Both the position numbers and the translations under genes were made by a program. This document shows, in pieces, positions 1,190 through 51,714 of a DNA stretch of 64,000 bases (position 1 is the stretch's first letter; every line of letters begins with the position of its first letter). The notes beneath the pieces were generated by a model that was given only the letters and a program-made list of their open reading frames with translations, made no database searches and was not told the origin of the DNA. The stretch comes from Octopus sinensis (Eukaryota): positions 47,554,001 to 47,618,000 of the forward strand of contig NC_043002.1 in NCBI RefSeq assembly GCF_006345805.1. Direction: 5' to 3'.

Positions 1190-2307
1190 CAACCACCCCA
1201 TACACTTATATTTGTACTACATATGTTAAGCATAAACAATAAAGGCGATTATTCTTTATGGAAAATAATTGAATTTTGTATAGATCATTAAATGCTTGTT
1301 TTTTTTCTATCAAGAAATTTTCTAAATTAAATGGCATATTTTAAAAATGTATAAACTGTTTATTTATACAATTTAGTATAATTTAATTTAATAAAACAAT
1401 TTTATTTTAGCTAAGAATACATAAGAAAATGTTAGATAAAGAATCATTTAAGGTTTAGTTTTTATATAGGCATAAAAGCTTAAATTTATAGATTTATAGC
1501 TGATGGGAACTAGAAAGTTAAGGTCATATTTTTCCAAATAATTTTAACAGTGTAAATTAGGTTAAGAATTGAAATTAAGCCATGTGCCTAAAACATTAAT
1601 TAAAAATTAATTATAATTTTGAGAGAATAAATCACTTATGTTTTCTAGTTTTATAAATGATTTATAGGGCTACATTATAAAAAATATAATCATTGCAAGT
1701 TTTTGAGAGTTTAATTTTAGACAACAAATTTGTATCATTAGACAAGAAGATTAAAGCATTAAGCAAGTAGTAATAGCCAGTATTAAAGCTATATTTTAAG
1801 AAAATTGCAGTGATTTCATTGAGAAGATGGTATAATTTTATTTTTAAAAAAATTGAAAGTTTTAGAAAGGAAATTCTAAGAATACAGAGATTGAAGTTTT
1901 AGTGAGAAAACTAGAGGATTAAGTAGACAGAAGAAGGATGTAAGTCAAAGTGAATAAGCAGAAGAGGACATTTATTTGAGCTCAAAGAGCAGAAGATGGA
2001 AGAAAGTGGAATAATTTAGCAGCATTGAATGAAAGTCTGTTGGGTTTCCACTGTCAAGAAACAGGACTAGTAAAAATGGATCTTAATAATATAATAATGA
2101 TGTCAAATAATATAGGTATGTATTAAGTAATGTATTGCTTGCATTAACAAAACTGAGTTTAAAATATTAAGTTTGTTTTAAACATTTCATAACCATCATT
2201 TTATTATCATATGAATATTAATAAAAAGGAATGATAAATTGTTAAGTATGGCTGACACTGATAGTATAAGTAGTTTTGGCTTTTTGTATTTTTTCAGGTC
2301 GTCTTAC

Positions 2308-2520
2308 CACAAGGTCCTCTCTGCTTTAGAATGATAGGGAGTTCGTTTTGGCAGGCATCTTTCTGAAGTTGGCATTCATTGTCGTATGTTACTCCATCAC
2401 TCCCACATATAGGGCGCAGCACCGGCTCACAAGAGGTGGGACACACACACTCCGCTACCCCCTGTCGATTGATGTTGCATCTTTCGTACTTTCTGCACTT
2501 GTTCGCACAAGGGTTGGTGC
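2308..2520 (-). CDS. Internal exon encoding a follistatin-like/Kazal module (FOLN+Kazal), agrin-like extracellular matrix protein
   Basis: Translation (G)TNPCANKCRKYERCNINRQGVAECVCPTSCEPVLRPICGSDGVTYDNECQLQKDAC-QNELPIILKQRGPC has all 10 Cys and the CGSDGxTYxNxC signature. Minus-strand acceptor is ...gttttgtcAG (plus 2521-2522 ct) and donor is GTAAGA (plus 2303-2307 cttac). Length 213 nt with symmetric phase 1-1, typical of one-domain-per-exon modular proteins. Agrin is the best guess; other FS/Kazal-repeat proteins are not excluded. Confidence 0.9.
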
Positions 2521-3592
2521 CTGACAAAACGTAAGGCAACATACGTACAGTTATCATCATTACTGTGGTAACCAAATATGATAGAGAGATAGAGAGAGGA
2601 TGGGAGGAACTGAGGCAAGAAAATATATATAGATAGATAGAGGTTTTAGAATATAGAGAAAAGACAGAGTGTGTGGACAGGAAGTTTGATTGGGATGGAC
2701 ATATTTTTCAGGCAACAACATTTGGAATTAACACTAGTTGTAGTTGTAGACAAATTAAGCAAAGAGAAAGAAGGAAACTTATGGACCAACAGAAAGATAT
2801 CATTCCTGTAAGTCAAGTCTCCCTCTATACAGCTTAAGATTCTTTGGTTTTGGACATAAAAAGGAAAAATTGATATCTTTTTTTCATCTCTTCTTCTGCT
2901 TCTTAATAATGTTTACATATTTCATGAAGATTATTAATTTTAAAATTTTTAGCATTATTTTTCAGCAATAATTTTTCTTAAATATTAATGTTTTTTTTTT
3001 TCACCTATTGCAAAAATATGGACACATTTTCTAAAGGAGAAATTATGAGTTTTTGTAGAGTAGAGAGTAAAATGGAAGTAAAATAATGCGAGAATTAAAA
3101 GAAAACAAATCATTATTAATTATTATCATTCTCTGTATTTTAATTATGTATATACGTATGATTACATATATGTGTGTGTATGTGTGTGCAAGCATATTTA
3201 TATATACATTTATATATATATATATATATACTTACACATGCACATATATATACACACATACATACATATTTATGTGAATATACATTTACACATATTATAT
3301 ATATACACATATATATATATATATAAAGGAAATGTTTAACATTGTGTGCCACATTAAGAACTCAACCAATATAAGCTTCTTTCCGTCTGAAACTCTGCTC
3401 CAAAGTATCAGATTCCAAATTCTGGATTCTACTCCACTTGAAAACATTGCAAATGAAATAATGAAAATATTTAAAAAAAAGTAAGAGTTAAAAAATATCA
3501 AGGAAGGCTTGTAATCCAAACTATCCTGATTAATATTTCTGTCATAAAAATCCACATTATTTTCCTATACATGTATATACTGAATATATATA

Positions 3593-12846: not shown

Positions 12847-13440
12847 TTAGGTCGTCAAGTATGAAATTTTTAGAAAAGAAAAAAGTTTGCTAATGTATTA
12901 TAAATACAAGGAATAGATTTATTCATCAAAGTATGCACCCATATTGTCAATACACTTTTGCCATTTCAGCAGTAGCTTGTCCAGCCTAGAACTGTAAAAG
13001 CCTGGCAATCTAGAGTCAGTAAAATCTTGGAAGGCCTGTTTTACAGCATCGTTGGAATTAAATTTTTTTCTTATCAAAAAGTTATCCAAATTCTGGAAGA
13101 AGTAGTAGTCAGTGGGGGCAAGATCAGGTGAGTATGGAGGATGATGGAGAACTTCCAACTCCAACTCCTGTAGTTTCACCAATGTTTGGTGTTGTCTTGC
13201 AGTAAAATAGGAGTGGATCTGCTGACTAATCTGAGATGTTTTTTGTATGTTTCTGCATCATTTAGTCCAGTTGGCTGCAGTATACTTTATAAGGCACAAA
13301 ATGAGTTAGAATAAAGAAATAGTTGTGTCAGCTTTCAACCAAAAAAATAAAGATTGTCAAAATATAATAACGATGCAAAATGAGCAGCTGTCAAAGTTTA
13401 CCATATACCTTACTACCAAATTTCATACTTGATGACCTAA
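12847..13440 (-). mobile_element. Internally deleted mariner DNA transposon (594 bp) with transposase C-terminal fragment
   Basis: 23-bp TIRs TTAGGTCGTCAAGTATGAAATTT (12847-12869) and AAATTTCATACTTGATGACCTAA (13418-13440), 1 mismatch. TA on both sides (12845-46, 13441-42). ORF 12919-13182(-) has LHHPPYSPDLAPTDYYFF and W.KCI...GAYFDE, the mariner YSPDLAPxD motif. Confidence 0.92.
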
Positions 13441-15619
13441 TATTATGAAGATATGCTTTCTATCTTATAATAACTGCCTGCTAGGGGAAACTACATATAC
13501 CAAATTCTTAAATCAGTATAGTCATTGTTAAGTAAGTTCTATTTCACTGGACTTCTGGTATGCATTCTGTTGTCTGAGCAAAGCATTGCTAAATGTGCCA
13601 AATATTGTATTTATCATGGAGCTTATACTCTAAACTTAAGACTTGAAATATTTCTTAAAATAGGACCGTTTTAAAGATATTAAGGAATTGCTATAGGAGA
13701 TTTGACTGCTAGATTGGCAAAATGATTGATTAAGTAGAAGCTCCTTTGTTGACATAAAAGGAAGCAATAAGACTGTAACAATAAACAGCTTTCAAGGGTC
13801 TATATTATGGCAGAAAGACTAATTTAATAGCCTAAAATAGATGAATAAATGGGGATCATATGTTATATACAGAATCATTCGATTGATTAGCTGTTAAAGA
13901 ATGTTATTATACTAGAATAGACATGCTTTAGAAAATGGAGGCTTGTATAATGAAGCTACAAACTTTATTTTTACTCCATAGAATAAATATAGACATGATG
14001 GTATCTTGTATCTTAAAAGATTAATATAAGTAGCTATTTATGTGAAAAGATTTTGATGAAAAGTGTCAATAAAATTTCCAGTAATCATTTAATAAGAAAA
14101 ATATTCTAAACAAAGATAAAGACCCAAATATAAAGGAATAATAATAAATTGAGAAAAAACTTAAATGTGAAATTTTTGAATATAATGACACAGGACCCTG
14201 CTTAGTGCCTGAAGATAAGAAAGTCAATTAAAGAACTAAAGAAAGAAATATTGCAAAATAATCTCATACAAAAGAGGAATTTTTGAAATGATTTCAAGTG
14301 AAAAGATAAACCATTATTCATTTGTTAAATTTGAAATCTTACTATATTCTGTTATTCTAATGCTCAAATGATTAATATTAAAACTTTGATAACATTCAGT
14401 ATTCTGTTGTTGCTAGCAAATAGGTATTAGTTCAATTACCAAATAGTTGCAAATCCCTGCTAATGTGCATTATATTTAATCTGAAAATTTTCCTCTCAAC
14501 AATTTGAATTGAACTTACTTCAAACCATTGAGAACAGCTTGCATCATTTTAACATTTAGGAATTAAAATATAACTACCAGCAAGAGCATATTTACTCTTA
14601 CTTTTAAATAATGTAAATATATTTTGTAAGTCCATTACTTTGATTATAGCCTGATATAATATGATACTGCAAACTTTAGTGGGGTGAAAGTAGGGTTTTT
14701 ATAAAAATTCAGAATGTTCGTTAGTTGAAAATAAGAATGTATACTAATATGAAGGTAAATAATAGGACCATTTATATTTGGGAAGAATTGATGAGATACC
14801 TTTTGTATATAAATTTATATAAAGTATAATTTGGAGTAGTACTTTTTGTCAATTCACTTGAAATGTGACAATCTGTTAAAATTGAAGTACTTACAATGTG
14901 GAAGAGTCATTCTAGCCATTTAAGAATACTCAAAACTGAAATATTCACTTTCCATTTATTTTTTCATTGATAGCATATCATGAAGTATTATCAACCCACC
15001 TGAAACCACTTCTGTTTCAATGATACAAAACTTCTGTCTTAAACCTTCTATCAAAATTCTGTGTTAATTTATGTTCCATACACTAGCTTAATTTGATGAA
15101 GTTTATTTATTATATTCTTCCTTATCTTCAAAATTAATTGAAACAATGACAATGCATTTCAACAAAGAAATGGTAACAGAAGAATTAAAATATTTCATTG
15201 CACTTTGACTTCTTGTCACTAACATAATTCCATTGTATGCATTTAAGTCACAGAAGTCTAATGAAACTATTTGGTGTTTCATAACAGATAGTACTATGGG
15301 CAAATAAATAGAAAGTGACCATAGCAGTTTTGATAAAAGGAGTTTTAATTCTTCAATACTGGTTGTTGCTGTTGTTGTTTTGACCTAGCAGAATTATAAT
15401 CAAAGTTATTCCAGCCAAACTATCATTGTTAAAACAATAGGGTGTGAATTGGATATTTGACTGCTAATATTAGCACAGCAAGCAACCATACAGAAGCAAC
15501 ATTTCCAGATACCACATGTTACAAGAAAGAAATATTGCTGATTGAAAAAATTGAATGATTCTGATTGGCTAGAAGGTCTATTATTTTAAATATTGATACT
15601 ACATCTTCTATTCAAAACT

Positions 15620-16026
15620 AAATCCTTTGTGAGCCGCTCTCCGGCTATCTATCTGTGGCTTTATATAGATATAGCTATGGTAAGACCTCACCTGGAATTT
15701 GCATCACCGGTCTGGAACCCCTATCTTGCCCAGGATATCAATAGTCTGGAAGCTGTTCTGCGACGTGCAACCAAAAGAATACCCTCCATCAGGCATTTGC
15801 CATATCCTGAACGCCTTACTTCCCTGGGCATGAACACATTGAAACTCCGACATCTGGCAGCTGACTTGGCAGACACCCATAAAATTATCAACCATCGTAC
15901 AAACAATAACTCTGAGCACCTTTTCAAACTCCACCCATCTAACACCCGTGGACATATTTACAAAGTAAGAAAACAGCACAGCTCCCATGACTTCAGGAAA
16001 CATTTTTTCATGCTGAGAGTTGCTGT
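15620..16026 (+). mobile_element. CR1/L2-group LINE ORF2 3' fragment
   Basis: MVRPHLEFASPVWNPYLAQDINSLEAVLRRATKRIPSIRHLPYPERLTSLGMNTL...TRGHIYKV...FRKHFF matches the post-RT region of CR1-group LINEs. No RT core or endonuclease is present. Confidence 0.85.
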
Positions 16027-17944
16027 GGGTATACTCCACTGTTTTGAGATAGTGTAGTCATGTGATAAGCAAAAGTTCAATCTCTACTCAAAACAGTTTA
16101 TGAACTATAGTTATCATTTGACAAGTAAGAATTTTCTTAAATTATTATTCAATCTTCGTAGATATTTCTAGTATAGCAAACAGATATTTCTTTGAAATAT
16201 TATCTGTAATGCTTTATTGCTTTAAAAGGAACTAAGTTGGAGATTTTGAACATTTCTGAAAACTGAGGAAATAGAATAATAAAACTTGAGTCTTAAATGG
16301 ATTCTGTTATATATAGGGCTTTAATGTAAGCAAATATTTAATTCAAGTGTGTATTTGAAATCTAAACACTGCGATCCATAAAAATCTGATCTGCAGCTTA
16401 AGAAATTTTTTTATTGATTTTCTTCTTTTGACATACCAATATTTGTTATCTTGTATTTTTCATATTCTTTTATTCTTTAATTTATTGCAGTCATGTGGCT
16501 GCGGTCATGCTGGAGCAGCACTTCAGAATTCCATCAATGTATACTTTATGTGAATACAATAATCAATGATTTTAATTGATTAATATAATAGACACTGTAT
16601 TTAATGTAATTATATGTAAAGAATTATGTTCTTACATTTAAATGCAATTAAATAGATTAACATATATTTTCAAATACAAAAACACATATGAATATATCAT
16701 ATAAGATTAAAACATGAGTGCATACTAAATTGTGTTTTCAGAGTAATTTTTAATATATACCAGTGGTAATATCTGAAAAAAAAATCAGAAAATTCTGCCA
16801 AAATTATAAAATGCTACGTTAATTTTGATGTGCATTTTGTAGAAATATTGAGTCTTTCCCCTCCATATATGCAAAGAGTCTCAAACCAACAGAGGTCCAT
16901 TGAAATATTTAGAAACTAAAATTCAGTGTTATATTTCTTTATACATGGCTATAATGTGAGAACATATTGACATGTTAATTAATCATAATGGAGAGATTAT
17001 GATAAAACAATGAGAAATAAAATACACTTTGTGAATCTTGGTTGGAAATCTATTATGAACTCAGTAATATCAAATATGGAATTAAAAAGAAAGGAAACAA
17101 AGAAAAAAATATTAAAAAAAATAACAATATTAAAGGAAATTTTTATACTTTCTGTTTTGCAAGTAATTTATTAGAAAGTTCTTATCAGGATTGTTAGAAA
17201 CTCTCTAAATACTTTAAATATATTTGAGGTATAGATTTTTCAAAATACAAATTCTAAAACATGTAATACTTTTAAAATACATATTTTTTCAATCATTGCT
17301 GTATGTAAGAGGATTAGATGTGAAATGTTTTAGCTTTATGTCTAAACTAATATGGAGATCTTTCTACTCACACTGTTTGCACTATTTAACTAAAATATGA
17401 TTTTGTAATATAATCATAATAAAAAGCATCAGTTACATTATTTTATGAAAATAATACTGAAGTTTCAAAATAATAGTTAAGTTTCAAGTAGGTAAAAAAC
17501 TGAATTTTCTGATCAATGAAAACACTGAAAGGTTATATGCCAATTGGTGGAAAAATTTAATTTTTGATGAATCAGTACATATTCATATAATCTTTTGCAG
17601 AGTTCTTGATGAGGCACTTAAAAAATATATAAGCATATTTCATATATTTAAGCATTTGATGTTATAAAAGTACACAAAATCTCATGAAAAAATCACAATA
17701 AAAGTTATTAACTAAAATATAAAAAAAAGAGAGTAGGAATTATACAAAGAAAAAATAGAAAACCATTTATCACATGATTTCTAGCATAACTGTTTAAAAT
17801 GCAGAAACATTCTGGTGTCTTTATCTCACTGGTATATTCATAGATGGAAAACAAACATTGCTGATAATGTATTTATAAATATAAGGATAGTTCAATTTAT
17901 CTAAACATATATCTTTCTTCTCCACCCAAATAAATGGTTGCACA

Positions 17945-30870: not shown

Positions 30871-30889
30871 CTCACAACACTCACAGCAC

Positions 30890-31053
30890 TCACAACACTC
30901 ACGGAGTGGTTGGCGTTAGGAAGGGCATCCAGCTTTAGAAACATTGCCAGATCAGACTGGAGCCTGGTGCAGCCTTCTGGCTTCCCAGACCCCAGTCGAA
31001 CCGTCCAACCCATGCAAGCATGGAAAGCAGACGTTAAACGATGATGATGATGA
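30890..31053 (+). mobile_element. RTE-LINE 3'-end-derived element, young copy
   Basis: GTGGTTGGCGTTAGGAAGGGCATCCAGC...CATGGAAAGCAGACGTTAAACGATGATGATGATGAT, CpG-retaining with a (GAT)n tail. RTE assignment is from recalled family resemblance. Confidence 0.7.
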
Positions 31054-31067
31054 TATATATATACACA

Positions 31068-32310
31068 CAGAGTGTGATGGTTAAATTTATATTTTATACT
31101 TTTAATTTGGCACATGTTCATTGTTTTTGATTTTGTTGGCTACACAGTATGGTAGAGTCAGTTGGGCACCAACTCTGAGAAAAACAGCACTATGATGCAG
31201 TTCACTCTGCCAGAAACTTGGAAACAACATGCTGTACTGCCTGGTATTCATGATGGAAGCTCCAATATGAACATTTCAGATTGTTTGGGTGTCAATCTGA
31301 GGTCAGTGCAGAGGATTCGAAAAGAGTTGGATGAAACTAATGATTATGAAGGTATGGCAGCTTGGAAAACTCACTCTGATTGTTCTGATGAGAAAAGAAC
31401 TCACTTCTGAATTTGTTGGTGAGATCCAGGCCATGATTGACAATGATCCCTCCAAGTCAATGAGGTCCATCACCAGGGACATGGAAGTGTCTGAGTTTCT
31501 TATCAGGCAGGTAATGCATGAATACATTCGGTATTCCTCATACAAGATGAGAAAGGGCCAATTTTTATATCAAACCATCAAGGACAAGGAGAAAACCATG
31601 CTACGAAGCTTTTGAACAAACTCAAGCATCCCCTCCAATCGAACATGCTTTGGGTTTTCTCAGATGAGAAAAATTTCTGCCATGATCAGATGGTGAACAC
31701 ACAGAACAATCGTTGGTTTGTCGTGTTCTCAAAACATGTACCGAGAGTGATGAAAATAAAATATTCACTCAACATCATGGTGTTTGGAGTGATCATTAGT
31801 GATGGCGATGTTATGTCTCCATTCATCTTCCCACATGGCCTCAGACTCCAACACAGTGGCTTGCATTAAGTGTCTGGAGGAGGTAGAGCTGCCCTGGGTG
31901 AAGAGGGTGGATGCTGGAAGATCCTATGTCTGGCAACAAAACTCTGCACCATGCCACACAAGCAGGAGAACCCAGTCATAGCTGTCAGACCACATCACCC
32001 CTAACATCTAGCCACCAAACTCCCCAGATTGCAATCCCCTTGATTATTATGTGTGGGCTGCAATTGAGCGAGAGATGATCAAAACTCTTTGTAACACCAA
32101 AGATGAACTGAAGACAAGGATTATGGCAGCATTCATCAACTTAAACAAGGAGACCACCCAGAAGAGTTGCTGGAGATTTTATTGAATAAATTTACTCTTT
32201 GGTATTTCAAGATTTTCATGTAATTATGGTAAATATATCTATTAAAATGAGATGTGAGTGTTATTTTCATTTTTACATAATTTAGATGACAATTTATTCA
32301 TCACACCCTG
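31068..32310 (+). mobile_element. Near full-length defective Tc1/mariner-superfamily transposon (maT/DD37D-like)
   Basis: Imperfect 20-bp TIRs CAGAGTGTGATGGTTAAATT and AATTTATTCATCACACCCTG followed by TA. Frameshifted transposase pieces: HTH (LGVNLRSVQRIRKEL; SMRSITRDMEVS), FSDEKNF, YVWQQ(N)SAPCHTS and (W)PPNSPDCNPLDYYVW. The second catalytic D is mutated to N and there are two TAG stops. Spacing to the third D is 33 in this copy, so DD37D would require a 4-codon deletion (inference). Confidence 0.88.
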
Positions 32311-37849: not shown

Positions 37850-39025
37850 TCTGAATATACCAGAAGAGTTAAAAAGCTATGTAGATCTAAGTTGACTGAA
37901 AGAACCTGATTAGAGGCATCAATGCATATGACAGTCGGTGTGATACATTACTGTGCAGGAATTGTGGAATGTACAAAGGTTAACATGAGTAGAAAAATTA
38001 GGAAGGTAATTGCTACATTGAAAGGTTTTACTTAGGAAGGAAGATGGAAGAAGACTGGATGGAACAGAGGCTAGTTTGTGAAGGAGACCAAGTACTTGCA
38101 TGCTTATCTGAGGAATAGTGATGAAAGAATGTTGCAGGCTGCCCTGAGTGAGATGGTGATCAGTGACTATGGTTAGACCTGCCAGGAGTACAATATGAGA
38201 TCTAATAGAGAAAAGATCATCAACTGGAAAGAGGAAGTCCTTCACAGAGAGTTTTCTCAGCAAACATCAAATGAAGAATACAGATAGTAAAGGCATAACT
38301 TTTTTTTTCAAAGAAGTTGACAAAAGGACTGATTCTTCCTGTTCAAGAACAAGCTTTACGAACCAACTCAATCAAGTGTAACATTGATAAGACAGCAGTT
38401 TCATCATTGTGTAGACCATGTGGAAAATCATCTGAGACAGTTAGACATATAATTAGTGGATGCTCAAAACTGATCCAAAAGGAGTACAAAAACAAAGACA
38501 TGACAAAATGGCAATGTGAATACATTGGAAGTTGTGCAAGAAGTATGGGTTTAAATGTTCCAATAAGTGGTATGAGCCAATCTTTGCCAGTAGCAGAAAA
38601 CGATCAGGTGAAACTTACATGGGATATGCTAATGTATACAGACAAGAAGCTGTTGCATAACTGACCAGATATCACCCTCCTATGGAAAAAGTCCAAAGTT
38701 ATCCTTGCAGAATAGAGCATTGTAAAAGCAGAGGGCAAGAAAATTGGAAAGTACCAAGGTCTAGCACTGGAAGTGAAACGAATTGACAGAGCTGCAAAAG
38801 TGAGTGTGATATGTATTATGATTGATGCACTTGGAACCATCTCAAAGAGATAGGAGCAATATTCTGACTTCAAAAACTGCATATACCAGACTTCATAGGA
38901 AGTATTCAGTTGATAACATTACTTAAAACAGCTCAATTGTTGAGAAAAGTGTTACTTCTCTAAGCTGTACGATGAAGCTGAGATGTGACATAAGTAACTC
39001 AAGAAACGTTAAGTGAATAAATGAA
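37850..39025 (+). mobile_element. 5'-truncated, frameshifted R4/Dong-like (restriction-like endonuclease) LINE
   Basis: YTRRVKKL..SKL..IRGINA...GVIHYCAGIV, then QEQALRTN...CRPCGKSSETVRHIISGC (CCHC knuckle), then PDITLL (REL PD motif)...KYQGLALEV, then TAQLLRKVL-stop at 38961-63, ending in an AAT-repeat tail. Confidence 0.8.
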
Positions 39026-39269
39026 TAATAATAAAAATTGCTTCTAACATAGGCACAAGACCTGAAATTTTGAGGGAGGAAGTTATTTGATACTATCAAC
39101 TCCAGAACTTCACTTGCGCTTTAGTTTACCAGTCAAGTACTGGAATGAATAGCATTAGCTAACTCCTTCCCAAATTTTGGGCCTTGTGCTTATGTTTCAG
39201 ACAACAACAACAACAATAATAATGATAATAATGGTTTCAAATTTTGACATAAGGCCAGCATGAATAATT

Positions 39270-39470
39270 GGCTGAGAGATGGGAGCAGAAATCTCTGTAT
39301 GGTAAATATGTGGCCTGTTCCAAACAAGCTGATGTTGATGAAAAGCACACTCATCAGTGGCTACAAAGCTTGAGGTTAAAGGCAGGGACCAAAGGCTTCA
39401 TCTTTGTTGTTCGAGATCAAAGCTTATTTACTCAGGACTACCAAGCCAATGTGATGAAAAATGGAGTAGA
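39270..39470 (+). mobile_element. Second R4/Dong-like LINE fragment
   Basis: RWEQKSLYGKY...DVDEKHTHQWLQSLRLKAGTKGFIFVVRDQSLFT corresponds to the pre-CCHC region of the neighbouring element. Confidence 0.7.
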
Positions 39471-42400
39471 TGTAACTCCTTTGGATAAAAACAAAATGAT
39501 CTGGTACAAATTTCTCAAGACTGGAATGAACAAGTTTGAAAATTCTTTGAAGAATTTCTTCATATCTTTGATCGTCATTGCCAGTTAATGTTGCATTTTT
39601 TTTAGTATATCACTCCACATCTTTTGACAACCATTGTAGGCTTATTAGGAAAATCTCTAGGGCCACTAGTCTAGATTCCAGTCTTCAGTCTCATCTGCAA
39701 AGTGATCTTGGAAACATTTGGTGAATTGCTTTGGGTCTTGTATCATAAATGCTTTTCACTTGCTAAAAGACCTTGTTGAGATATTAATGAATAAATGGTA
39801 AAAAAAAAAGCACTAATCAAGCATCCTCTTTTAGCTTCAGTCTAACTTGACTTGATTGATCAATATTTTGTGCATGGAATAGATCATGACTTTAAACTGT
39901 GAATAGCTGGCTAATTAACCATTGGTCTAACAAATATTATATTCAAATAATATCTGTTACTTTCACCTTTATCAGAAATCCTTACTGATTTCCTCAGATG
40001 CAAGCTGTAACCAGCCAGCCAGTGTACAGAGATTCAGTTTATACAGGTTAAACAAGCTCTTATTGCAGAATTTTCCAGAGTAAATTGCCATGGTTTCTTA
40101 ATATTTATGCCTTCCTTTCTGATGTGTTTGTGCTTAAAAAAGCACTGCTTCTCCACAAGCTTGTGAAATCTGTTGCTGATCAAATAATATTAATAACCTT
40201 TTAGTGTCTGTCATATTTTACATATGTATGTCATTAATTTATTCATTTAACATCCATTTATCCATGCTAGTACAGCTTGGATAGAAATTGATTTTAAGGC
40301 AAGATTTTATAGTTGGATGTTCTTCCTGTTGTTCACCCTCAAAAGTCTTTCAAGCAAGGGATTTATATATTCCAAAGGTTCATAACCACACACACAGTGC
40401 TTGCTTATTCCATATAACTGTGTAATTAGTAAACAAGGGTACAACTCAAAATACATTTCTAATTATGAGTTACTGTATATTTATATTTATTACTTTAGTC
40501 ATTATATTTATAGTTAGAAAGCGTAGTGACAATTTTTAAGGAAAACACTTATTTAACCTTTACACTGTACTGTGTACACTGTGTAAATGCATACACAAGC
40601 ACAAACACACATACACAAATATGCAGACATATGCTCAAGGCTGTTTTCATTATAAAATTTATAAGATAAAAAGAGTTGCAAGATATTTCATATCACTTGC
40701 TATGAGAATATTTACAAATAAGAAAGGTAAATAATTCCAATATAACCATAAGCTCCATTCTTCAAGATTAAGTAAATCACCCAAACTATCTTTCATATAT
40801 AATTGAATAGTATAGTACAAGATAGATTTTTTCTCTTTTCTAAAGTACTGAAGTTTTATGTAATCAAAATAATGACAACATTTCTTAGATCTTGAGCACT
40901 TAGCAATCAATTATTTTCATAAACATAATTGCAAATGTAATATCATCAGATAAATAAAGACAAGCCAAATCACTCAACAGGCTGTATAAGGACATCAATA
41001 AAAAACCTACCATAGATTCCTATCTTAAAAATAACCTAAAGCTAAATAGAAATATTTAACCAGCTACAGTAAAATTTTAGTAATCTAAAACAGTTTATCA
41101 TAATATTTTTAAAGTAAACAAATGTACAGTGTTATGATAATGATAATGGTAATTAGTGATACCTGTGGTGTTTAATCATAGACCAAAAATAACCAGTTTC
41201 AATGAATTACATAAACACTGCTTTTGGAAATGCTCCTCAGCCAATACAATATAAAATTAATAGAATTAGAGTTTGACAATCAGTACAGTTTAAATTAAGG
41301 AAGGTAAAAACTATTTCTTGTAAGCTTCTTTAATCTGATCAGAAAATTTCCTATAATAAATAAAATAGGTTGGTGCCATGCAGTGCTTGTTCATTCTCTG
41401 GCTAATGAGGAAGAAAAAGTCGACAGAATAATTTTTTCTTTTTTTTTGTAAATACAATAATAAAATCTGGCATTTTTGTCAGTGTTTCAGCTGTTTCACA
41501 ATACTAGATATCATGGGAATTAAATTTATAATGATATTTCATTACTTTTGCCTCCAAATTCAGAATGAATATTAAAAATGAATAGAACAAAAATAAAATT
41601 ATAGAAGTGTCAAGATACCATTTCTAACAATGAATGAATGAAAGAAACTAAATATCATGTACATATGCAAATCCATGCTGAAAAGTAATTATAGTTACAT
41701 ACTAAAATCGTCTTTAAACAACATAACTTTTATATTGCACTCAGTAAGAGTTATCAAACAGAAATGCATATAGTTCATTCAGGACATAATACAAAAACAA
41801 AATATTTATAAGTATAAAATAGAATTTCAAATTTCTACAACTAATGGAAAAGGTAACTATCATATCTACGAAAGCATCCAAACTAATGCTATTATATTTT
41901 CTTCAAAGAGATGGACGTGTATGACATGAAATTTGAATAATTCTTTTCAATGCATCACAAGGTCATGAAATCCAGATATTGATTTCCTAAAGAGGTTAAT
42001 GGCTTCAGTTTCAAGGATGGATGCTATCCACCATTGAATATTGTGAGATATTCATATCTTTTCCAAAGTCATTACCAATGTAAGTAAAGGGAAATGCAAA
42101 TTAGCTGCTGTGAACTTTGATTACTAGAATTTACCTCTGATGTAGAGTATTGCTCCAGTAAATTAAATTATTCAATAGCATAATATTAGTTGTATATTCA
42201 AGACTTATATAATATTCATTCATCATTGGACTGTAGTTTATATCAATCTTTCATTTAAATGACATCCTTGGAGGTATAGTTTAGTGGGAAAGGAACCCAA
42301 TTCATGCTTAATTGATCAGTTAGCTATGAACCACTTCTTTTATTTCTCTCTCTCATATGATACACTCTTCATGGCAACTAAATTTATCCAACACGTCTAT

Positions 42401-43959: not shown

Positions 43960-44363
<404 letters not shown>

Positions 44364-44518
44364 TAGTTATCGCCATACTAATATGGCATTCTTATAAAAA
44401 TAAGAATAAAGCTGACCGCTTATTAGCTCCATGAGGCCATCGCCTTAAGTTAGCTATTTGATACACAAACTGTATCCATATAACCTTTGAACAAGGGAGG
44501 TCAGTCGCTCCACACTAC

Positions 44519-44578
44519 TTGGCCGGCAGCTACAGACGCGTTTCGGGTTATTGCCCCTTTTCAATGCAGCGTAGCCAA
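44519..44578 (-). ncRNA. Minimal type I hammerhead ribozyme, copy A
   Basis: UUGGCU-AC-GCUGCA-UUGAAAA-GGG-GCAAUAA-CCC-GAAA-C-GC-GU-C/UGUAGC-UGCC-GGCCAA. Predicted cleavage between 44535 and 44534. Confidence 0.8.
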
Positions 44579-44881
44579 ACCAGTAGGTGTCGCTTCCGAC
44601 AATCTCTGTTCAAAGGTTTTATTTACCTAGCTTCGGTGGAATACATCCACTTGTTTTCAATAATAGAAATATTAAAATTACTAAGTCTCTCTAAAAGAGA
44701 ACAACGGCAGCGTTCCCGGAAAATATTAGTTATCGCCATACTAATATGGCATTCTTATAAAAATAAGAATAAAGCTGACCGCTTATTAGCTCCATGAGGC
44801 CATCGCCTTAAGTTAGCTATTTGATACACAAACTGTATCCATATAACCTTTGAACAAGGGAGGTCAGTCGCTCCACACTAC

Positions 44882-44941
44882 TTGGCTGGCAGCTACAGAC
44901 GCGTTTCGGGGTATTGCCCCTTTTCAATGCAGCGTAGCCAA
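44882..44941 (-). ncRNA. Minimal type I hammerhead ribozyme, copy B
   Basis: UUGGCU-AC-GCUGCA-UUGAAAA-GGGG-CAAUA-CCCC-GAAA-C-GC-GU-C/UGUAGC-UGCC-AGCCAA. Predicted cleavage between 44898 and 44897. Confidence 0.85.
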
Positions 44942-46796
44942 ACCAGTAGGTGTCGCTTCCGACAATCTCTGTTCAAAGGTTTTATTTACCTAGCTTCGGT
45001 GGAATACATCCACTTGTTTTCAATAATAGAAATATTAAAATTACTAAGTCTCTCTAAAAGAGAACAACGGCAGCGTTCCCGGAAAATATTAGTTATTAGT
45101 ATGGCGATAACTAATATTTTCCGGGAATGCTGCCGTTGTTCTCTTTTAGAGAGACTTAGTAATTTTAATATTTCTATTATATGTATATAGTCTTCTCTAT
45201 GTAACAGTAAATATATATATACATATATATATCCACACACACACATGTATATACATATATGCATATATGTGTGTGTATATTTAATGACTGTCATATGAGA
45301 TTCCTTTAGCTGAAAGAAATTCTATGGATCTTTAATATAGTTATCCTATTATATAGTTATCTTATTATAATTTTCTTCATCTATTCAAGTTACATTTATA
45401 TATGTTTATGTTATATAAAGTGCAACATTTTGAAAATACATTTGATGTTTACTTAAAAAGATTTCTATATTTTTCTCAACTATAAGCTTTACTACTATGT
45501 TCATTAGATATTACATTTATTTCAGTATGTGAACCTAAGTTGTTGTTGTTGACATATTCTAGTCATAATCATTCTATCTGATTCTTTCACAAAATATATC
45601 CAAGATTACATTATCCGATGTACTCTTACTTTTTCATGATGGTAAGGTGTGGTTTTAGTGAATTTAGTTGCTATCTCCAATAAATTGAGCAACTGTATAC
45701 AGGCATGTTTGCTAGTTTGTGAAATTGCACTATTTTGTGTTGTGGTTGTTATAAATATGAACCTGTGGAAACTATTTTATATGAGGGTTGTCAAGGAGGG
45801 AAAGGGTCAAGTACCTACTTATATGTTTATTTCTTCAGTGCTCCTGAGAATGTTAGAAGGGAAAAAGCTATTCCAAACTATAAATCTGGTCCAATGCTTG
45901 TAGTAGAGCTGGATTTATTAAATGTACTCCAAGACCAAGTGGTTGTTTTAGACAAACTGATTGAGTCAGATATGCAAGAGCTCAGAATGCAACATACTGG
46001 AACAAATATCAAAAGAGATCTTGGCTGAGACACTAATTCCCCTAATCCACTGTCCTGGATTGCTACTTTATTTCATTAATCTTTAATGGATGAAAGACAA
46101 AGTTAACTTCAGTGGGATTGAAATACAGAGCACACTGAGCCAGAACAGATACTGCAAGGTATTTTGTCCTAAGTCTAAACTTCATCTTTGTCATATTAAT
46201 GTCCATTTTTCAATACTTGCATGAGTTGGACAGTATATTAAGACCAATTTTCCTACAGCCAGATGAATTTCTTGTTACTAGTCATCACTTGTTTCTAAGA
46301 CACGTAGAGAATATTGAAAATAAATTACACTGCTTGCACGACTCCACTAATTTGCTACCAAATTGTCTAAGCTCTAATTCCACTGGGATTGACTTAGTGT
46401 TTCATTTTACGGTATCTCAATAAAATAAGCATAAGTAATAACATACAAGGTGTCAAATTCAGTCAGATGCTTTCTCCATAAATTAGTGGTCTTGTACCAC
46501 AGTATAACAAAATCAATGTAATTCCCTACTCATAATGAAAATGGAACGGAAATCTAAAGACAACAACCTCCGCTTTGATAGTAATATATATAAAAAATTC
46601 TTGCACACAAATCTAACTGACATTGTTACCAACCAAACAACCAGCAAGCAGTATAATAGTAACATAACACAAGAGAAAAAAATAATGATTCCATCAGTCA
46701 CATTTGAAGTATATCAATACTGTTAATAAATATCCTTTGAAAATGAGTAATAAAATGTTGAGAAAGAAAAGATATTGCTGGCTTTAATCTTTAATA

Positions 46797-49335: not shown

Positions 49336-51164
49336 TGTCAACAATTTATTTGTTACTATTGTTGTTTAACATCATGTCAACCCAGACTCAATAGATTTAT
49401 GATCATAACATTCAACTCATGACTATCCAATCTATTGCTAACCCTCTAGGATTACATTAGACAATGTGTTTTGCTTTTTATTTGATGATAGAATATGAAC
49501 TGAAGGAACATGGTTGCCATTTTCAGCTGGTTGAGTAACTGCATAAATGTTGGATTATGTTATTTATTGATAAGTTGTCTTGTTCTATGAATTAGCTTAA
49601 AGTAACATATATTTCTATATTGTGTGTGGTTGTTGTTCTTGTTGAACTCCCAGACTAACTCTAATTGGGTAGAACTATGATCAAAAGTATTTCAACAATG
49701 ACCAAGCAATATTTTTTCCACATGCCTATTAATCAATATTACTCAATTTGATGACACTGAAGCCTGATGCAACCTTACAGCTTGATGGTTCCTTGTCAAA
49801 CAATCCTACTTATACCAGAATGGAAAGTAGATGTTAAATGATGATGATGATGATGATGTGTATTTCCTTATTTTTTGAAGACAATAAAGTGAGATTCAAG
49901 GGGATTTGGTTGCTTATTTTCCAAATTCAGTAATTATAGAGCATCTGCCTAATGACTGTAATTGTTGGTGCAATGTTGCTTAAAGTTTACTAATAAATTT
50001 CCTTTCATTTTATCGAAAATATTCATCTTATTCAGTCAAGTTTCCCATCTATTTAATATTCAAGTATGTTATGTATGCAAAATATGAAGTGTATATACAG
50101 TGTCCCTTCTAGTTGCATTTTTAGGAATATATTTAAACTTGTACAAGTTTTATGATTTGCATCTGTCACATGAATATGTAAATTTGTATAGAGGTAAGAA
50201 TCAGATTGAAACAAATCATTACCATAATGACATAAGAAATTTCAAAGATAAAAACATTAAATCAAAGGTTTCTACCATAACTAATGAAAGAACAAAACTA
50301 CAGATAAAATGTACAGTCACAAAAGATATTATACAAAGTATAACACAACTTATATAATGGACGTGATTTTTCAACACAAATGTTACATAAAACGCAAAGT
50401 AACTATATCATAGTCATGAATTAAAACTCAACACTAACTGCAAATTCTTAGAAATTAACACGGCATTTAAATCACACAACTAATTTGATAAAGGGTAAGA
50501 AGTTAAGTCCTTATGAACATAACTTGATACACTGAGTAGTTTTCCAAGAATAAACATAGTAAATGAGATTAAATCTTAATTAGCACAGTTCTGAGATAAC
50601 TCCAAGATTCATTTTCATGTTGAATAGCCAATTATCAACCAAAGAACTACAAACGACTAATAAAGAATTAGTTAATAAACCATAAATCAATACAACTAGT
50701 TTATAAGCAATATAATGCAAAAATGTGACAGCTTATAGTAACTAAAAATGAACTAAATGAATTTATTTTATTAACTAACACATCACACCTTACTCCATTT
50801 ATAGGCGAATATATTCCCAACACCATTATAAAAACATGAAATCTTAATAAAAATTACCACACGCACACATTGTCAGGAATTTGCAAAAATTATTTTCTCT
50901 ATTAAAGTAGTAAAGCATTTCACTATCATAGGCAACTATATCATTAATATTGAGTTGAAAGTTACATACAATCATTCAAACACATCGCCAATATCCATTT
51001 CCAGCATTACCCTAAAAGTGGTACTTAAAATCTACATTATCACAAAAAAAACCCCTCATTTGTTGATAATTCCAACATATTCTGAGTAGTATTTTACCTG
51101 TGGTACAAAGTTTTCCCAAATTACTTTATGCCTGAAGATCAAAAGTACTTATCATTTGTGATCT

Positions 51165-51166
51165 CA

Positions 51167-51203
<37 letters not shown>

Positions 51204-51331
51204 CACATATATATACATACATACATACACATATATATACATACATACATACACATACATACATACATATATATATACACACATACATACATACATATAT
51301 ATACATACATACATATATATACACACATATG

Positions 51332-51366
<35 letters not shown>

Positions 51367-51410
51367 TACTTATACATATATATATAGCTATACATATACA
51401 CATACTTATA

Positions 51411-51480
<70 letters not shown>

Positions 51481-51505
51481 TACATGTATATATAGGTATG
51501 AATAT
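51165..51505. repeat. Long compound (TA)n/(TACA)n microsatellite
   Basis: Read directly. Confidence 0.95.
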
Positions 51506-51714
51506 ACATATATAAAAGATCGATACTAATATAGAATTTACAGTTATATAACCTATACATAAAGAAAATATAATACAACAGCCATCGTTTTAAATTATAT
51601 ACAAATGGGTATCAGCAATAAAATTTTACTTCTAGCCTTATATCTCAGCCCATGTAAGAACACATACCATACCAGTTTACATTATACTCAAGCACACACA
51701 CACACACACACACA

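What the first reader, a model, noticed from the sequence alone, without database searches (positions are those of the whole stretch)
44519..44941. Pair of minimal hammerhead ribozymes that must fold as a dimer, with a U3-A8 core covariation
Seen: on the minus strand each unit reads helix I (GCUGCA/UGUAGC), core UUGAAAA, helix II (GGGG/CCCC), GAAA, helix III ACGCGU and cleavage triplet GUC. Helix I continues past a 2x4 internal loop (UUGGCU/AGCCAA). The canonical CUGANGA is changed at exactly the two positions that pair with each other (C3-G8 to U3-A8), a double change unlikely to come from decay. Helix III has only a 2-nt loop, so it cannot close in a monomer, but ACGCGU is palindromic and two tandem copies can pair. 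Established: Penelope-like elements and metazoan non-LTR retrozymes carry minimal type I hammerheads with palindromic helix III that cleave as dimers, and C3-G8 is a Watson-Crick pair tolerant of compensatory swaps. Inference: this is an active self-cleaving motif that a CUGANGA-only search would miss. I cannot say whether this family is already described in cephalopods.
Basis: partly seen in the sequence, partly recalled or inferred. Interest (0 to 1): 0.92.

Follow-up and report, generated by a model that had tools for sequence, protein, structure and literature searches.

The report
Octopus retrozyme with variant hammerhead ribozymes
A small non-coding jumping element in an octopus genome carries two copies of a well-known self-cutting RNA motif with a rare but already documented core variant; it is a genuine, fairly ordinary new member of a known family, and its activity is untested.

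Summary
On the minus strand, at 44882-44941 and 44519-44578, lie two type I hammerhead motifs. Each has a 6-bp helix I continued by a distal stem, the core UUGAAAA, a GGGG/CCCC helix II, GAAA, the palindrome ACGCGU and a GUC cleavage site. Every invariant core base is present except C3-G8, which is replaced by the Watson-Crick pair U3-A8.

The motifs sit one per unit in a 363-bp tandem repeat of 2.03 copies. An inverted 87-nt partial copy lies upstream, and the whole insertion lies in a (TA)n microsatellite of an Octopus genome. This is the insertion style of Penelope-like elements and matches the definition of metazoan non-LTR retrozymes.

The unconstrained minimum-energy fold of the two-unit transcript is the double hammerhead, with a shared 6-bp helix III. 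A strict descriptor matched 0 of 1300 simulated windows. Rfam finds nothing, even at E<=10.

The novelty claim fails. Natural U3-A8 hammerheads were reported in 2011, and in Penelope-like elements in 2014. Dimer-dependent type I hammerheads in roughly 330-350-nt repeats are known from amphibians.

I found no other family copies, so conservation and true covariation remain untested, and cleavage is not shown.

Verdict: real feature, new member of a known kind, possibly the first noted in cephalopods. Interest is modest.

The parts
44360..45096 (-). Tandem array of 2.03 units of a 363-bp non-coding repeat. Unit 1 is 44734-45096, unit 2 is 44371-44733, and 11 nt of a third unit occupy 44360-44370. 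GC content is 40%.
   Evidence: TRF reports period 363, 2.0 copies, 99% matches. The units differ at only 2 positions. No tRNA is present. ORFs of at most 102 aa have no homologues.
44882..44941 (-). Hammerhead copy 1, type I. It has a distal stem, an internal loop, a 6-bp helix I, core U3-UGAA-A8-A, a 4-bp G-C helix II with loop CAAUA, GAA, the helix III palindrome ACGCGU, and C17.
44519..44578 (-). Hammerhead copy 2. It is the same motif, except that 11.4 is A (44548), giving a 3-bp helix II, and the distal helix I pair U-A is replaced by U-G (44524).
44897..44898 (-). Predicted cleavage site 1, between C17 (44898) and U1.1 (44897). The equivalent site 2 is between 44535 and 44534.
   Evidence: from the position of GUC|UGUAGC. 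Inferred, not measured.
44535..44897 (-). The 363-nt RNA monomer that double cleavage would release. It is predicted to be highly self-paired (63% of bases paired as a circle, -117.4 kcal/mol).
44840..44990 (-). Long interrupted stem that extends helix I of copy 1, a 151-nt arm. The same arm exists for copy 2 at 44477-44627.
   Evidence: MFE is -63.9 kcal/mol with z = -6.57 on the minus strand, against -55.7 and z = -5.53 on the plus strand. The arm has 52 pairs, 4 of them G-U.
45094..45180 (+). Inverted partial copy of 87 nt, corresponding to unit positions 351-363 plus 1-74. It is joined head-to-head to the upstream end of the array with a 3-nt overlap, and it forms a hairpin with 74-nt arms (45023-45096 / 45107-45180).
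   Evidence: Inverted repeats I1 and I9, 99% complementary; blastn.
44171..44359 (.). The (TA)n microsatellite into which the element is inserted, on the downstream side in the element's sense orientation. The other flank, from 45181 to about 45285, is also TA/CA-rich.
   Evidence: TRF reports (TA)98.5 at 44171-44363; flank sequences.
44351..44362 (.). Candidate target-site duplication TATATGTATATA, repeated at 45178-45189. It is ambiguous because the same string also occurs inside the microsatellite.

Best explanation
The locus is a young insertion of a non-autonomous element related to Penelope-like elements (PLEs), of the metazoan 'non-LTR retrozyme' type, in an Octopus genome.

Proposed mechanism:
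1. The minus strand is transcribed through the two 363-nt units.
2. Each unit carries a type I hammerhead whose helix III is too weak to close alone. In the two-unit transcript the palindromes ACGCGU of the two copies pair, and the helix I strands swap, giving a double hammerhead with two complete active sites.
3. [quoted passage not shown]
4. A host RtcB-type ligase could circularise this RNA. In the monomeric circle the hammerhead cannot complete helix III, so the circle is stable.
5. A PLE reverse transcriptase/GIY-YIG endonuclease supplied in trans would copy the circle. More than one turn of copying gives tandem units, and integration is into (TA)n.

The U3-A8 pair replaces C3-G8 isosterically and should keep the core fold.

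Shown here: sequence anatomy, tandem and inverted architecture, the (TA)n site, and the predicted double-hammerhead fold. Inferred: transcription, cleavage, circularisation and mobilisation by a PLE.
For: Motif and coordinates are confirmed.

Core. U4, G5, A6, A9, G12, A13, A14, A15.1-U16.1, C17 and G10.1-C11.1 are all present, and position 3-8 is a Watson-Crick U-A pair.

Chance. The strict descriptor gave 0 hits in 1300 simulated windows. These are the only descriptor hits in the 64-kb window.

Fold. The MFE of the two-unit transcript equals the double hammerhead, and constrained and unconstrained energies are the same at -195.2 kcal/mol. The trans dimer is 6.1 kcal/mol better than two monomers. 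Monomeric helix III is unfavourable by +5.6 kcal/mol.

Repeat. The array is 363 bp x 2.03, GC 40%, with no coding capacity. This fits the retrozyme definition in PMC7229834 and PMC7761336.

Insertion style. An inverted truncated copy upstream plus a (TA)n target matches the PLE insertion structure in PMC8557442.

Template. The array ends at unit positions 1 and about 10, not at the cleavage site (position 204/205). That fits a circular or multimeric template.

Host. The host is Octopus, and O. vulgaris carries Penelope families listed among its putatively active elements (PMC13282606).

Precedent. U3-A8 is a documented natural variant, and covarying 3-8 pairs are active in vitro (PMC3088659; PMC4209133). 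Animal retrozymes are reported to derive from PLE pLTRs (bioRxiv 10.64898/2026.07.22.740005).
Against: - No second, independent copy of the family was found in the rest of the window, in 60 kb of sampled Octopus DNA, in the protein collection using ORF handles, or in metagenome and viral contigs. Family-wide conservation and covariation are therefore untested.
- Rfam hammerhead models give no hit at E<=10.
- PLE-associated dimeric hammerheads showed only low activity in vitro (PMC4209133), so real cleavage may be weak.
- Copy 2 has a weakened helix II.
- The strand asymmetry of the fold is modest: only 4 G-U pairs, and the plus strand also folds well.
- No PLE ORF is present in the window.
- The tandem duplication could have arisen at the DNA level rather than by rolling-circle reverse transcription.
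Confidence: 0.72

Rival explanations
1. The hammerhead-bearing element is genuine but catalytically dead, or is an orphan relic. The motif descends from a PLE or retrozyme hammerhead, but U3-A8, the 1-bp helix III and the weakened helix II of copy 2 leave it with negligible cleavage, and the locus is just a fossil insertion.
For: PLE dimeric hammerheads cleave poorly in vitro, mostly at non-physiological Mg2+ (PMC4209133). Copy 2 has a G.A mismatch at 10.4-11.4. No other copies were detected. Rfam models score the motif below E=10.
Against: The insertion is young: 2 differences in 363 nt between units and 1 in 87 nt in the inverted fragment. All invariant core bases are intact. Both unit differences keep a foldable motif (U-A to U-G, and a top helix II pair that only enlarges the loop). 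Amphibian motifs with the same helix III design cleave efficiently as dimers (PMC7229834). U3-A8 variants are active (PMC3088659).
Confidence: 0.17
2. The match is a chance hammerhead look-alike inside an unrelated hairpin-rich tandem repeat or foldback element. The long palindromic arm supplies 'helix I', and AT-rich sequence supplies UUGAAAA and GAAA by accident.
For: A relaxed U3-A8 descriptor matches by chance in about 4% of simulated AT-rich 64-kb windows, 13 times more often than the C3-G8 version. The two copies are one independent event. The plus strand folds nearly as well. There is no Rfam support.
Against: The strict descriptor gave 0 hits in 1300 windows. The GC-rich helix II and the CG-rich palindrome sit at exactly the right spacing in a 30% GC window. 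The one-motif-per-unit tandem arrangement, the unit size, the inverted truncated copy and the (TA)n target are independent features that all point to the PLE/retrozyme class. The dimer MFE is the double hammerhead without any constraint.
Confidence: 0.06
3. The ribozyme is active but does not need to dimerise. Loop-loop tertiary contacts between the helix I internal loop and loop 2, or a protein chaperone, stabilise the A15.1-U16.1 pair plus CGCG tetraloop well enough for monomeric cleavage.
For: Most invertebrate retrozyme hammerheads cleave as monomers (PMC7229834 and PMC7761336). The motif has the canonical 6-bp helix I, internal loop, 4-bp helix II and 5-nt loop 2 layout that supports tertiary contacts. 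Axolotl monomers still cleave weakly.
Against: Invertebrate monomer-active motifs owe this to a stable helix III, which is absent here. The nearest-neighbour cost of the monomeric helix III is +5.6 kcal/mol, whereas the dimer gains 6.1 kcal/mol. The helix III sequence is a perfect 6-nt palindrome, the signature of dimer-acting motifs (PMC4209133).
Confidence: 0.15

Closest known systems
Amphibian satellite-2 / axolotl retrozyme hammerheads (HHR_Amex1; PMC7229834)
   Same: Both are type I topology. Both have a 6-bp helix I followed by an internal loop, a 4-bp helix II, and a helix III reduced to one base pair capped by a palindromic tetraloop. Both have one motif per unit of a roughly 330-350-nt low-GC tandem repeat, and both are weak as monomers but efficient as dimers.
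   Different: The amphibian core is the canonical C3-G8, whereas here it is U3-A8. Amphibian families have about 60,000 copies each in long arrays. Here only a 2.03-unit array was seen, with a PLE-style inverted fragment, in an invertebrate, where published retrozyme hammerheads usually have a stable helix III.
U3-A8 min-HHRs of Schistosoma mansoni Cercyon Penelope-like elements (PMC4209133)
   Same: Both carry the same core covariation (U3-A8 instead of C3-G8), are associated with PLEs, and are presumed to act as dimers through a palindromic 15.x-16.x segment.
   Different: The min-HHRs lack helix III and loop 3 nucleotides, have a longer helix II with an extra nucleotide between A9 and 10.1, and lie in pLTRs flanking an RT-EN ORF or as dispersed single motifs. 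The octopus motif has the canonical architecture and sits in an ORF-less 363-bp tandem unit.
Invertebrate non-LTR retrozymes (coral Acropora, mussel Mytilus; PMC7229834, PMC7761336)
   Same: Both are non-coding tandem repeats of 170-400 bp, with low GC and one type I hammerhead per unit. The monomer RNA is predicted to be highly self-paired, and the host phylum Mollusca is already represented.
   Different: The published invertebrate motifs form a stable helix III and cleave as monomers with a canonical core. Expression as circRNA is shown for them and is untested here.
Penelope-like element insertion architecture (Neptune/Naiad-type; PMC8557442)
   Same: Both show partial tandem copies, an inverted truncated copy adjacent to the upstream repeat forming an inverted-repeat structure, insertion into (TA)n microsatellites, and unclear TSDs.
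   Different: No RT or GIY-YIG ORF is present. The unit is only 363 bp, and the ends of the direct and inverted copies fall at different unit positions, as expected for a template without fixed ends.
Natural U3-A8 hammerheads reported by Perreault et al. 2011 (PMC3088659)
   Same: Both replace the C3-G8 core pair with a compensatory U3-A8 pair. That paper describes such covarying variants as active in vitro.
   Different: Those examples come from a broad comparative survey across the domains of life, not from a cephalopod retrozyme.

Membership tests
Hammerhead ribozyme, type I | Three helices around the core, with helix I open and helices II and III closed (order: I-5', core, II, GAA, III, H17, I-3') | tested here: met
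   Direct reading; own descriptor scan; structure evaluation. Helix III closes only as 1 bp plus a tetraloop in cis, or as 6 bp in the dimer.
Hammerhead ribozyme, type I | Invariant core bases U4 G5 A6 A9, G12 A13 A14, A15.1-U16.1, H17 (not G), G10.1-C11.1 | tested here: met
   All are present in both copies.
Hammerhead ribozyme, type I | C3-G8 tertiary Watson-Crick pair (consensus CUGANGA) | tested here: inconclusive
   The consensus bases are not present. They are replaced by U3-A8, which keeps a Watson-Crick pair. This swap is documented in natural hammerheads and is reported active in vitro (PMC3088659; PMC4209133). No homologues with C3-G8 were available to show covariation within this family.
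Hammerhead ribozyme, type I | Match to Rfam hammerhead covariance models at the gathering score | tested here: not met
   No hammerhead hit at the gathering score on the window, nor at E<=10 on 901 nt or on 91 nt.
Hammerhead ribozyme, type I | [quoted passage not shown] | not testable with these tools
   Needs in vitro transcription or RNA end mapping.
Metazoan non-LTR retrozyme | Tandem repeats of about 150-450 bp, each unit with a type I hammerhead, from dimers to long multimers | tested here: met
   363 bp x 2.03 copies, with one motif per unit. Definition in PMC7229834.
Metazoan non-LTR retrozyme | Low GC (<45-50%), and no LTR, PBS, PPT or coding capacity | tested here: met
   GC 40.5%. 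Only short ORFs without homologues. No tRNA-like part.
Metazoan non-LTR retrozyme | Multi-copy dispersed family in the host genome | tested here: inconclusive
   No other copy in the 64-kb window or in 60 kb of sampled Octopus loci. Whole octopus genomes cannot be searched by DNA with these tools.
Metazoan non-LTR retrozyme | Expression as linear and circular monomer RNAs | not testable with these tools
   No transcriptome access.
Penelope-like element (autonomous) | ORF with telomerase-like RT and GIY-YIG endonuclease between pLTRs | tested here: not met
   No such ORF in or near the array, or among the larger ORFs of the window. The element can only be a non-autonomous derivative.
Penelope-like element (insertion signature) | Partial tandem copies plus an inverted truncated copy upstream, with a microsatellite (TA)n target | tested here: met
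   compared with the description in PMC8557442.
PLE min-HHR (Cervera and de la Pena 2014) | No helix III or loop 3 nucleotides, a long helix II (about 6 bp), and an extra nucleotide between A9 and 10.1 | tested here: not met
   Helix II is 4 bp with no bulge after A9, and a CGCG insert is present between A15.1 and U16.1. The motif fits that paper's 'canonical' metazoan type I description instead.

The most novel reading that the evidence does not exclude
This could be the founding example of an active retrozyme family in cephalopods. The family would use a U3-A8 hammerhead of the amphibian, dimer-dependent design, which is unusual for an invertebrate. It would be expressed as 363-nt circular RNA and currently mobilised by an octopus Penelope/Neptune-type element into (TA)n microsatellites by rolling-circle reverse transcription. 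If so, standard CUGANGA or Rfam-based annotation has systematically missed a whole class of ribozyme-bearing repeats in cephalopod genomes.
Probability: 0.3. Interest if true: 0.45.

Novelty: new member of a known kind. Interest (0 to 1): 0.3.

Why it matters
If active, the locus extends circRNA-producing retrozymes to cephalopods. It would also show that the dimer-regulated hammerhead design known from amphibians occurs in an invertebrate, here with the U3-A8 core. In practice it is a concrete case where Rfam and consensus-core searches return nothing for a structurally complete hammerhead, so ribozyme and retrozyme censuses in AT-rich animal genomes probably undercount such variants. It does not change the understanding of hammerhead catalysis or of Penelope-like elements, because each individual feature is already published.

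Tried and rejected
- **Rfam cmscan.** Run on the window at gathering thresholds, on 901 nt and on 91 nt at E<=10. There was no hammerhead or other ribozyme hit. The only strong sub-threshold hits (mir-8 at 45.5 bits, MIR444 and others at 45023-45183) come from the perfect head-to-head palindrome and were rejected as real miRNAs.
- **ORFs as handles for other copies.** I searched the protein collection with the 92-aa plus-strand ORF and with a six-frame concatenate of the unit. Neither gave a hit.
- **Pattern scans of public contigs.** The pattern TGAANRAGGGGN{3,8}CCCGAAACGCGTC gave 2 hits in metagenome contigs. Both lie in GC-rich sequence that reads like a bacterial S9-type peptidase gene (my reading of the sequence, not searched) and are chance matches. 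Viral contigs gave 0 hits.
- **Sampling octopus DNA.** Three 20-kb loci around LINE proteins from O. vulgaris and O. sinensis contain no copy of the unit.
- **blastn of the unit against the window.** Only the array and the inverted fragment matched.
- **tRNA-derived SINE head.** None found.
- **PLE ORFs in the window.** None among the ORFs tested.
- **Literature.** Searches joining retrozyme or hammerhead ribozyme with octopus or cephalopod found only Craig et al. 2021, in another context. One broader query was swamped by cephalopod-only papers. A search for the literal string GAAACGCGUC returned only unrelated primers. Supplement look-ups found nothing. Lunse et al. 2017 (PMC5785218) is not held.
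- **Position of the unit differences.** Both differences between the units fall inside the hammerhead. I considered this as evidence of selection or hypervariability, but at p of about 0.03 from two events it is too weak to use.

Full report
**1. What is in the sequence**

On the minus strand, both copies read UUGGCU-AC-GCUGCA-UUGAAAA-GGGG-CAAUA-CCCC-GAAA-CGCG-UC|UGUAGC-UGCC-AGCCAA.
- A 42-nt pattern search finds exactly two sites, 44892-44933 (0 mismatches) and 44529-44570 (1 mismatch). None are expected in shuffles.
- In standard hammerhead numbering, copy 1 has U3 at 44927, A8 at 44922 and G12-A14 at 44907-44905.
- A15.1-CGCG-U16.1 lies at 44904-44899 and C17 at 44898.
- Predicted cleavage is between 44898|44897, and between 44535|44534 in copy 2.
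- U4, G5, A6, A9, G12, A13, A14, A15.1-U16.1, C17 and G10.1-C11.1 are all present. The only departure from the consensus core is U3-A8 instead of C3-G8.

**2. Context**

- The two motifs are one per unit of a 363-bp tandem repeat of 2.03 copies at 44360-45096, 99% identical.
- The units differ at two bases only, both inside the hammerhead.
  - 44911 versus 44548 is C/A at position 11.4, the top pair of helix II.
  - 44887 versus 44524 is A/G in the distal helix I, giving U-A versus U-G.
- On the sense (minus) strand, an inverted 87-nt partial copy (45094-45180) is fused head-to-head upstream of the array. It creates a hairpin with 74-nt arms.
- The whole insertion lies in a (TA)n microsatellite (44171-44363), and the other flank is also TA-rich.
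- A possible 9-12-bp duplication, TATATGTATATA, borders both ends, but it also occurs within the microsatellite.
- The unit has 40% GC, no tRNA-like part and only short ORFs without homologues.

The window is from an Octopus genome.
- A LINE ORF at 15593-16057 is 87-93% identical to Octopus vulgaris proteins.
- Window repeats match O. vulgaris and O. sinensis loci at 88-97%.

**3. More than chance?**

I wrote a type I descriptor with any Watson-Crick 3-8 pair, helix I of 5 bp, helix II of at least 3 bp, and 0-12 nt inside helix III.
- It hits only these two sites in the 64-kb window, on either strand.
- In simulated windows of the same dinucleotide make-up, the U3-A8 version arises in 13 of 300 windows and the C3-G8 version in 1 of 300. 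A relaxed U3-A8 match alone is therefore weak evidence in AT-rich DNA.
- The descriptor that reflects what is actually present (6-bp helix I, 4-bp helix II, palindromic helix III insert) gave 0 hits in 1300 simulated windows.
- The tandem one-per-unit arrangement and the insertion architecture are independent of the descriptor and point the same way.

**4. Folding**

- A monomeric helix III with a 2-nt loop is sterically impossible. The alternative, A15.1-U16.1 closing a CGCG tetraloop, costs +5.6 kcal/mol in the nearest-neighbour model.
- The unconstrained MFE of a 531-nt transcript spanning both motifs is the classical double hammerhead.
  - The 5' strand of helix I in copy A pairs with the 3' strand in copy B, and vice versa.
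  - Each helix II forms locally.
  - ACGCGU of A pairs with ACGCGU of B as a 6-bp helix III.
  - Enforcing that helix gives the same energy, -195.2 kcal/mol.
- Two separate 66-nt hammerhead RNAs cofold into the same structure at -54.9 kcal/mol, against 2 x -24.4 for the monomers.
- Helix I is extended by a long interrupted stem. The 151-nt arm folds at -63.9 kcal/mol with z = -6.57, against -55.7 and z = -5.53 for the plus strand.
- The 363-nt monomer is predicted to be 63% paired as a circle.
- The distal helix I has two possible registers.

**5. What it most likely is and does**

The insertion style matches what Craig et al. describe for PLEs: partial tandem copies, an inverted truncated copy at the upstream end, and a (TA)n target (PMC8557442). 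[quoted passage not shown] O. vulgaris carries Penelope families listed among its putatively active elements (PMC13282606).

The proposed mechanism is as follows.
1. Read-through transcription of the minus strand.
2. Double-hammerhead cleavage of the two-unit transcript, releasing the 363-nt RNA (44897 to 44535).
3. Circularisation by a host ligase.
4. Reverse transcription and integration by a PLE RT/EN supplied in trans.

Two inferences follow from the ends of the insertion.
- The array begins at unit position 1 and ends at about position 10, roughly 160-200 nt from the cleavage site. This fits a circular or multimeric template copied for just over two turns better than a cleaved linear monomer.
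- Both outer ends lie in AU-rich stretches that could anneal to (TA)n, and the inverted fragment joins with a 3-nt overlap. This is compatible with priming from both nicked strands.

Only the anatomy and the predicted folds are shown here. Transcription, cleavage, circularisation and mobilisation are inferred.

**6. Comparison with what is known**

- **U3-A8.** Perreault et al. 2011 state that C3 and G8 covary to U3 and A8 in several natural hammerheads, and that such variants were already known to be active in vitro (PMC3088659). Cervera and de la Pena 2014 found U3-A8 in Schistosoma Cercyon PLE hammerheads, with about 1,300 hits (PMC4209133). The C3-G8 pair itself was confirmed by Przybilski and Hammann 2007 and by Nelson and Uhlenbeck 2008, as cited in PMC3884650.
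- **Architecture.** The 2014 paper calls this layout canonical for metazoan type I motifs: helix I 6 bp, helix II 4 bp, and helix III of 1-2 bp capped by a 2-4-nt palindromic loop. The octopus motif lacks the min-HHR features (no helix III, long helix II, a bulge after A9). 'Minimal' is therefore not the best label.
- **Closest match.** The nearest structural match is the amphibian HHR_Amex1 type. It has a single base pair capped by a palindromic tetraloop, is weak as a monomer and efficient as a dimer, and sits in roughly 330-350-nt repeats. Published invertebrate retrozyme hammerheads mostly have a stable helix III and act as monomers. An amphibian-style design in a mollusc is therefore a small point of interest.

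**7. What could not be established**

- I found no second independent copy anywhere I could look. Family-wide conservation, helix covariation and the existence of C3-G8 relatives are all untested.
- Rfam hammerhead models do not report the motif even at E<=10 on 91 nt.
- PLE-associated dimeric hammerheads cleaved poorly in vitro, so real activity may be low.
- In the searchable library, no paper links hammerhead ribozymes or retrozymes with cephalopods, apart from an unrelated mention in Craig et al. 2021. That library is incomplete.

**8. Verdict**

The feature is a real hammerhead-bearing retrozyme or PLE-derived insertion. It is a new member of a known kind, because each notable feature has published precedent: the U3-A8 core, the palindromic helix III with dimer dependence, the tandem 363-nt unit, and the (TA)n PLE-style insertion.

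Interest is about 0.3. The value lies in a likely first cephalopod example, and in a documented blind spot of consensus-based ribozyme annotation.

Noticed in passing
window 45023-45180 (centre about 45101): The head-to-head junction between the inverted 87-nt fragment and the array forms a near-perfect hairpin with 74-nt arms. It scores 45.5 and 43.5 bits against Rfam mir-8 (gathering score 47) on both strands, and also hits several plant MIR families. This looks like an artefact of a perfect palindrome, because the mir-8 seed is not matched. Such a hairpin could still be a source of small RNAs or an ADAR substrate.
   Followed up: partly
window 44911/44548 and 44887/44524: The only two differences between the 363-nt units both fall inside the roughly 60-nt hammerhead (p of about 0.03 by position alone). 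One is a CpG/CpA difference that changes a U-G pair to U-A. The single difference in the inverted fragment is also CpG to TpG.
   Followed up: partly
window 44351-44362 and 45178-45189: The same 12-nt string TATATGTATATA borders both ends of the insertion. It may be a target-site duplication, but it also occurs at 44219 and 44319 inside the (TA)n tract, so this is ambiguous.
   Followed up: partly
window 2297-2707 (-): An open frame encodes a Kazal-type domain (Pfam Kazal_2, E=3.8e-12). It is probably an exon of a host follistatin-, agrin- or SPARC-like gene.
   Followed up: partly
window 15593-16057 (+), 38299-38661 (+), 39268-39585 (+): These are LINE remnants. The first ORF is 87-93% identical to Octopus vulgaris 'jockey-like RNA-directed DNA polymerase' proteins, which identified the host. 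The other two look like LINE C-terminal pieces by eye, and Pfam gave no significant hit for them.
   Followed up: partly
window 12922-13257 (-), 31156-31866 (+): These appear to be Tc1/mariner-type transposase remnants. The first has a weak, sub-threshold match to Pfam DDE_3 (E=2.6e-4).
   Followed up: partly
window 30885-31054: A repeat of about 170 bp has multiple 88-94% identical copies on both strands in the sampled O. vulgaris and O. sinensis loci L004 and L005. It is probably an abundant octopus SINE.
   Followed up: no
window 51126-51578 and many other sites: Long TA/CA-type microsatellites are frequent throughout the window, which has 30.5% GC. They generate spurious long ORFs rich in Y, I, C and H.
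   Followed up: no
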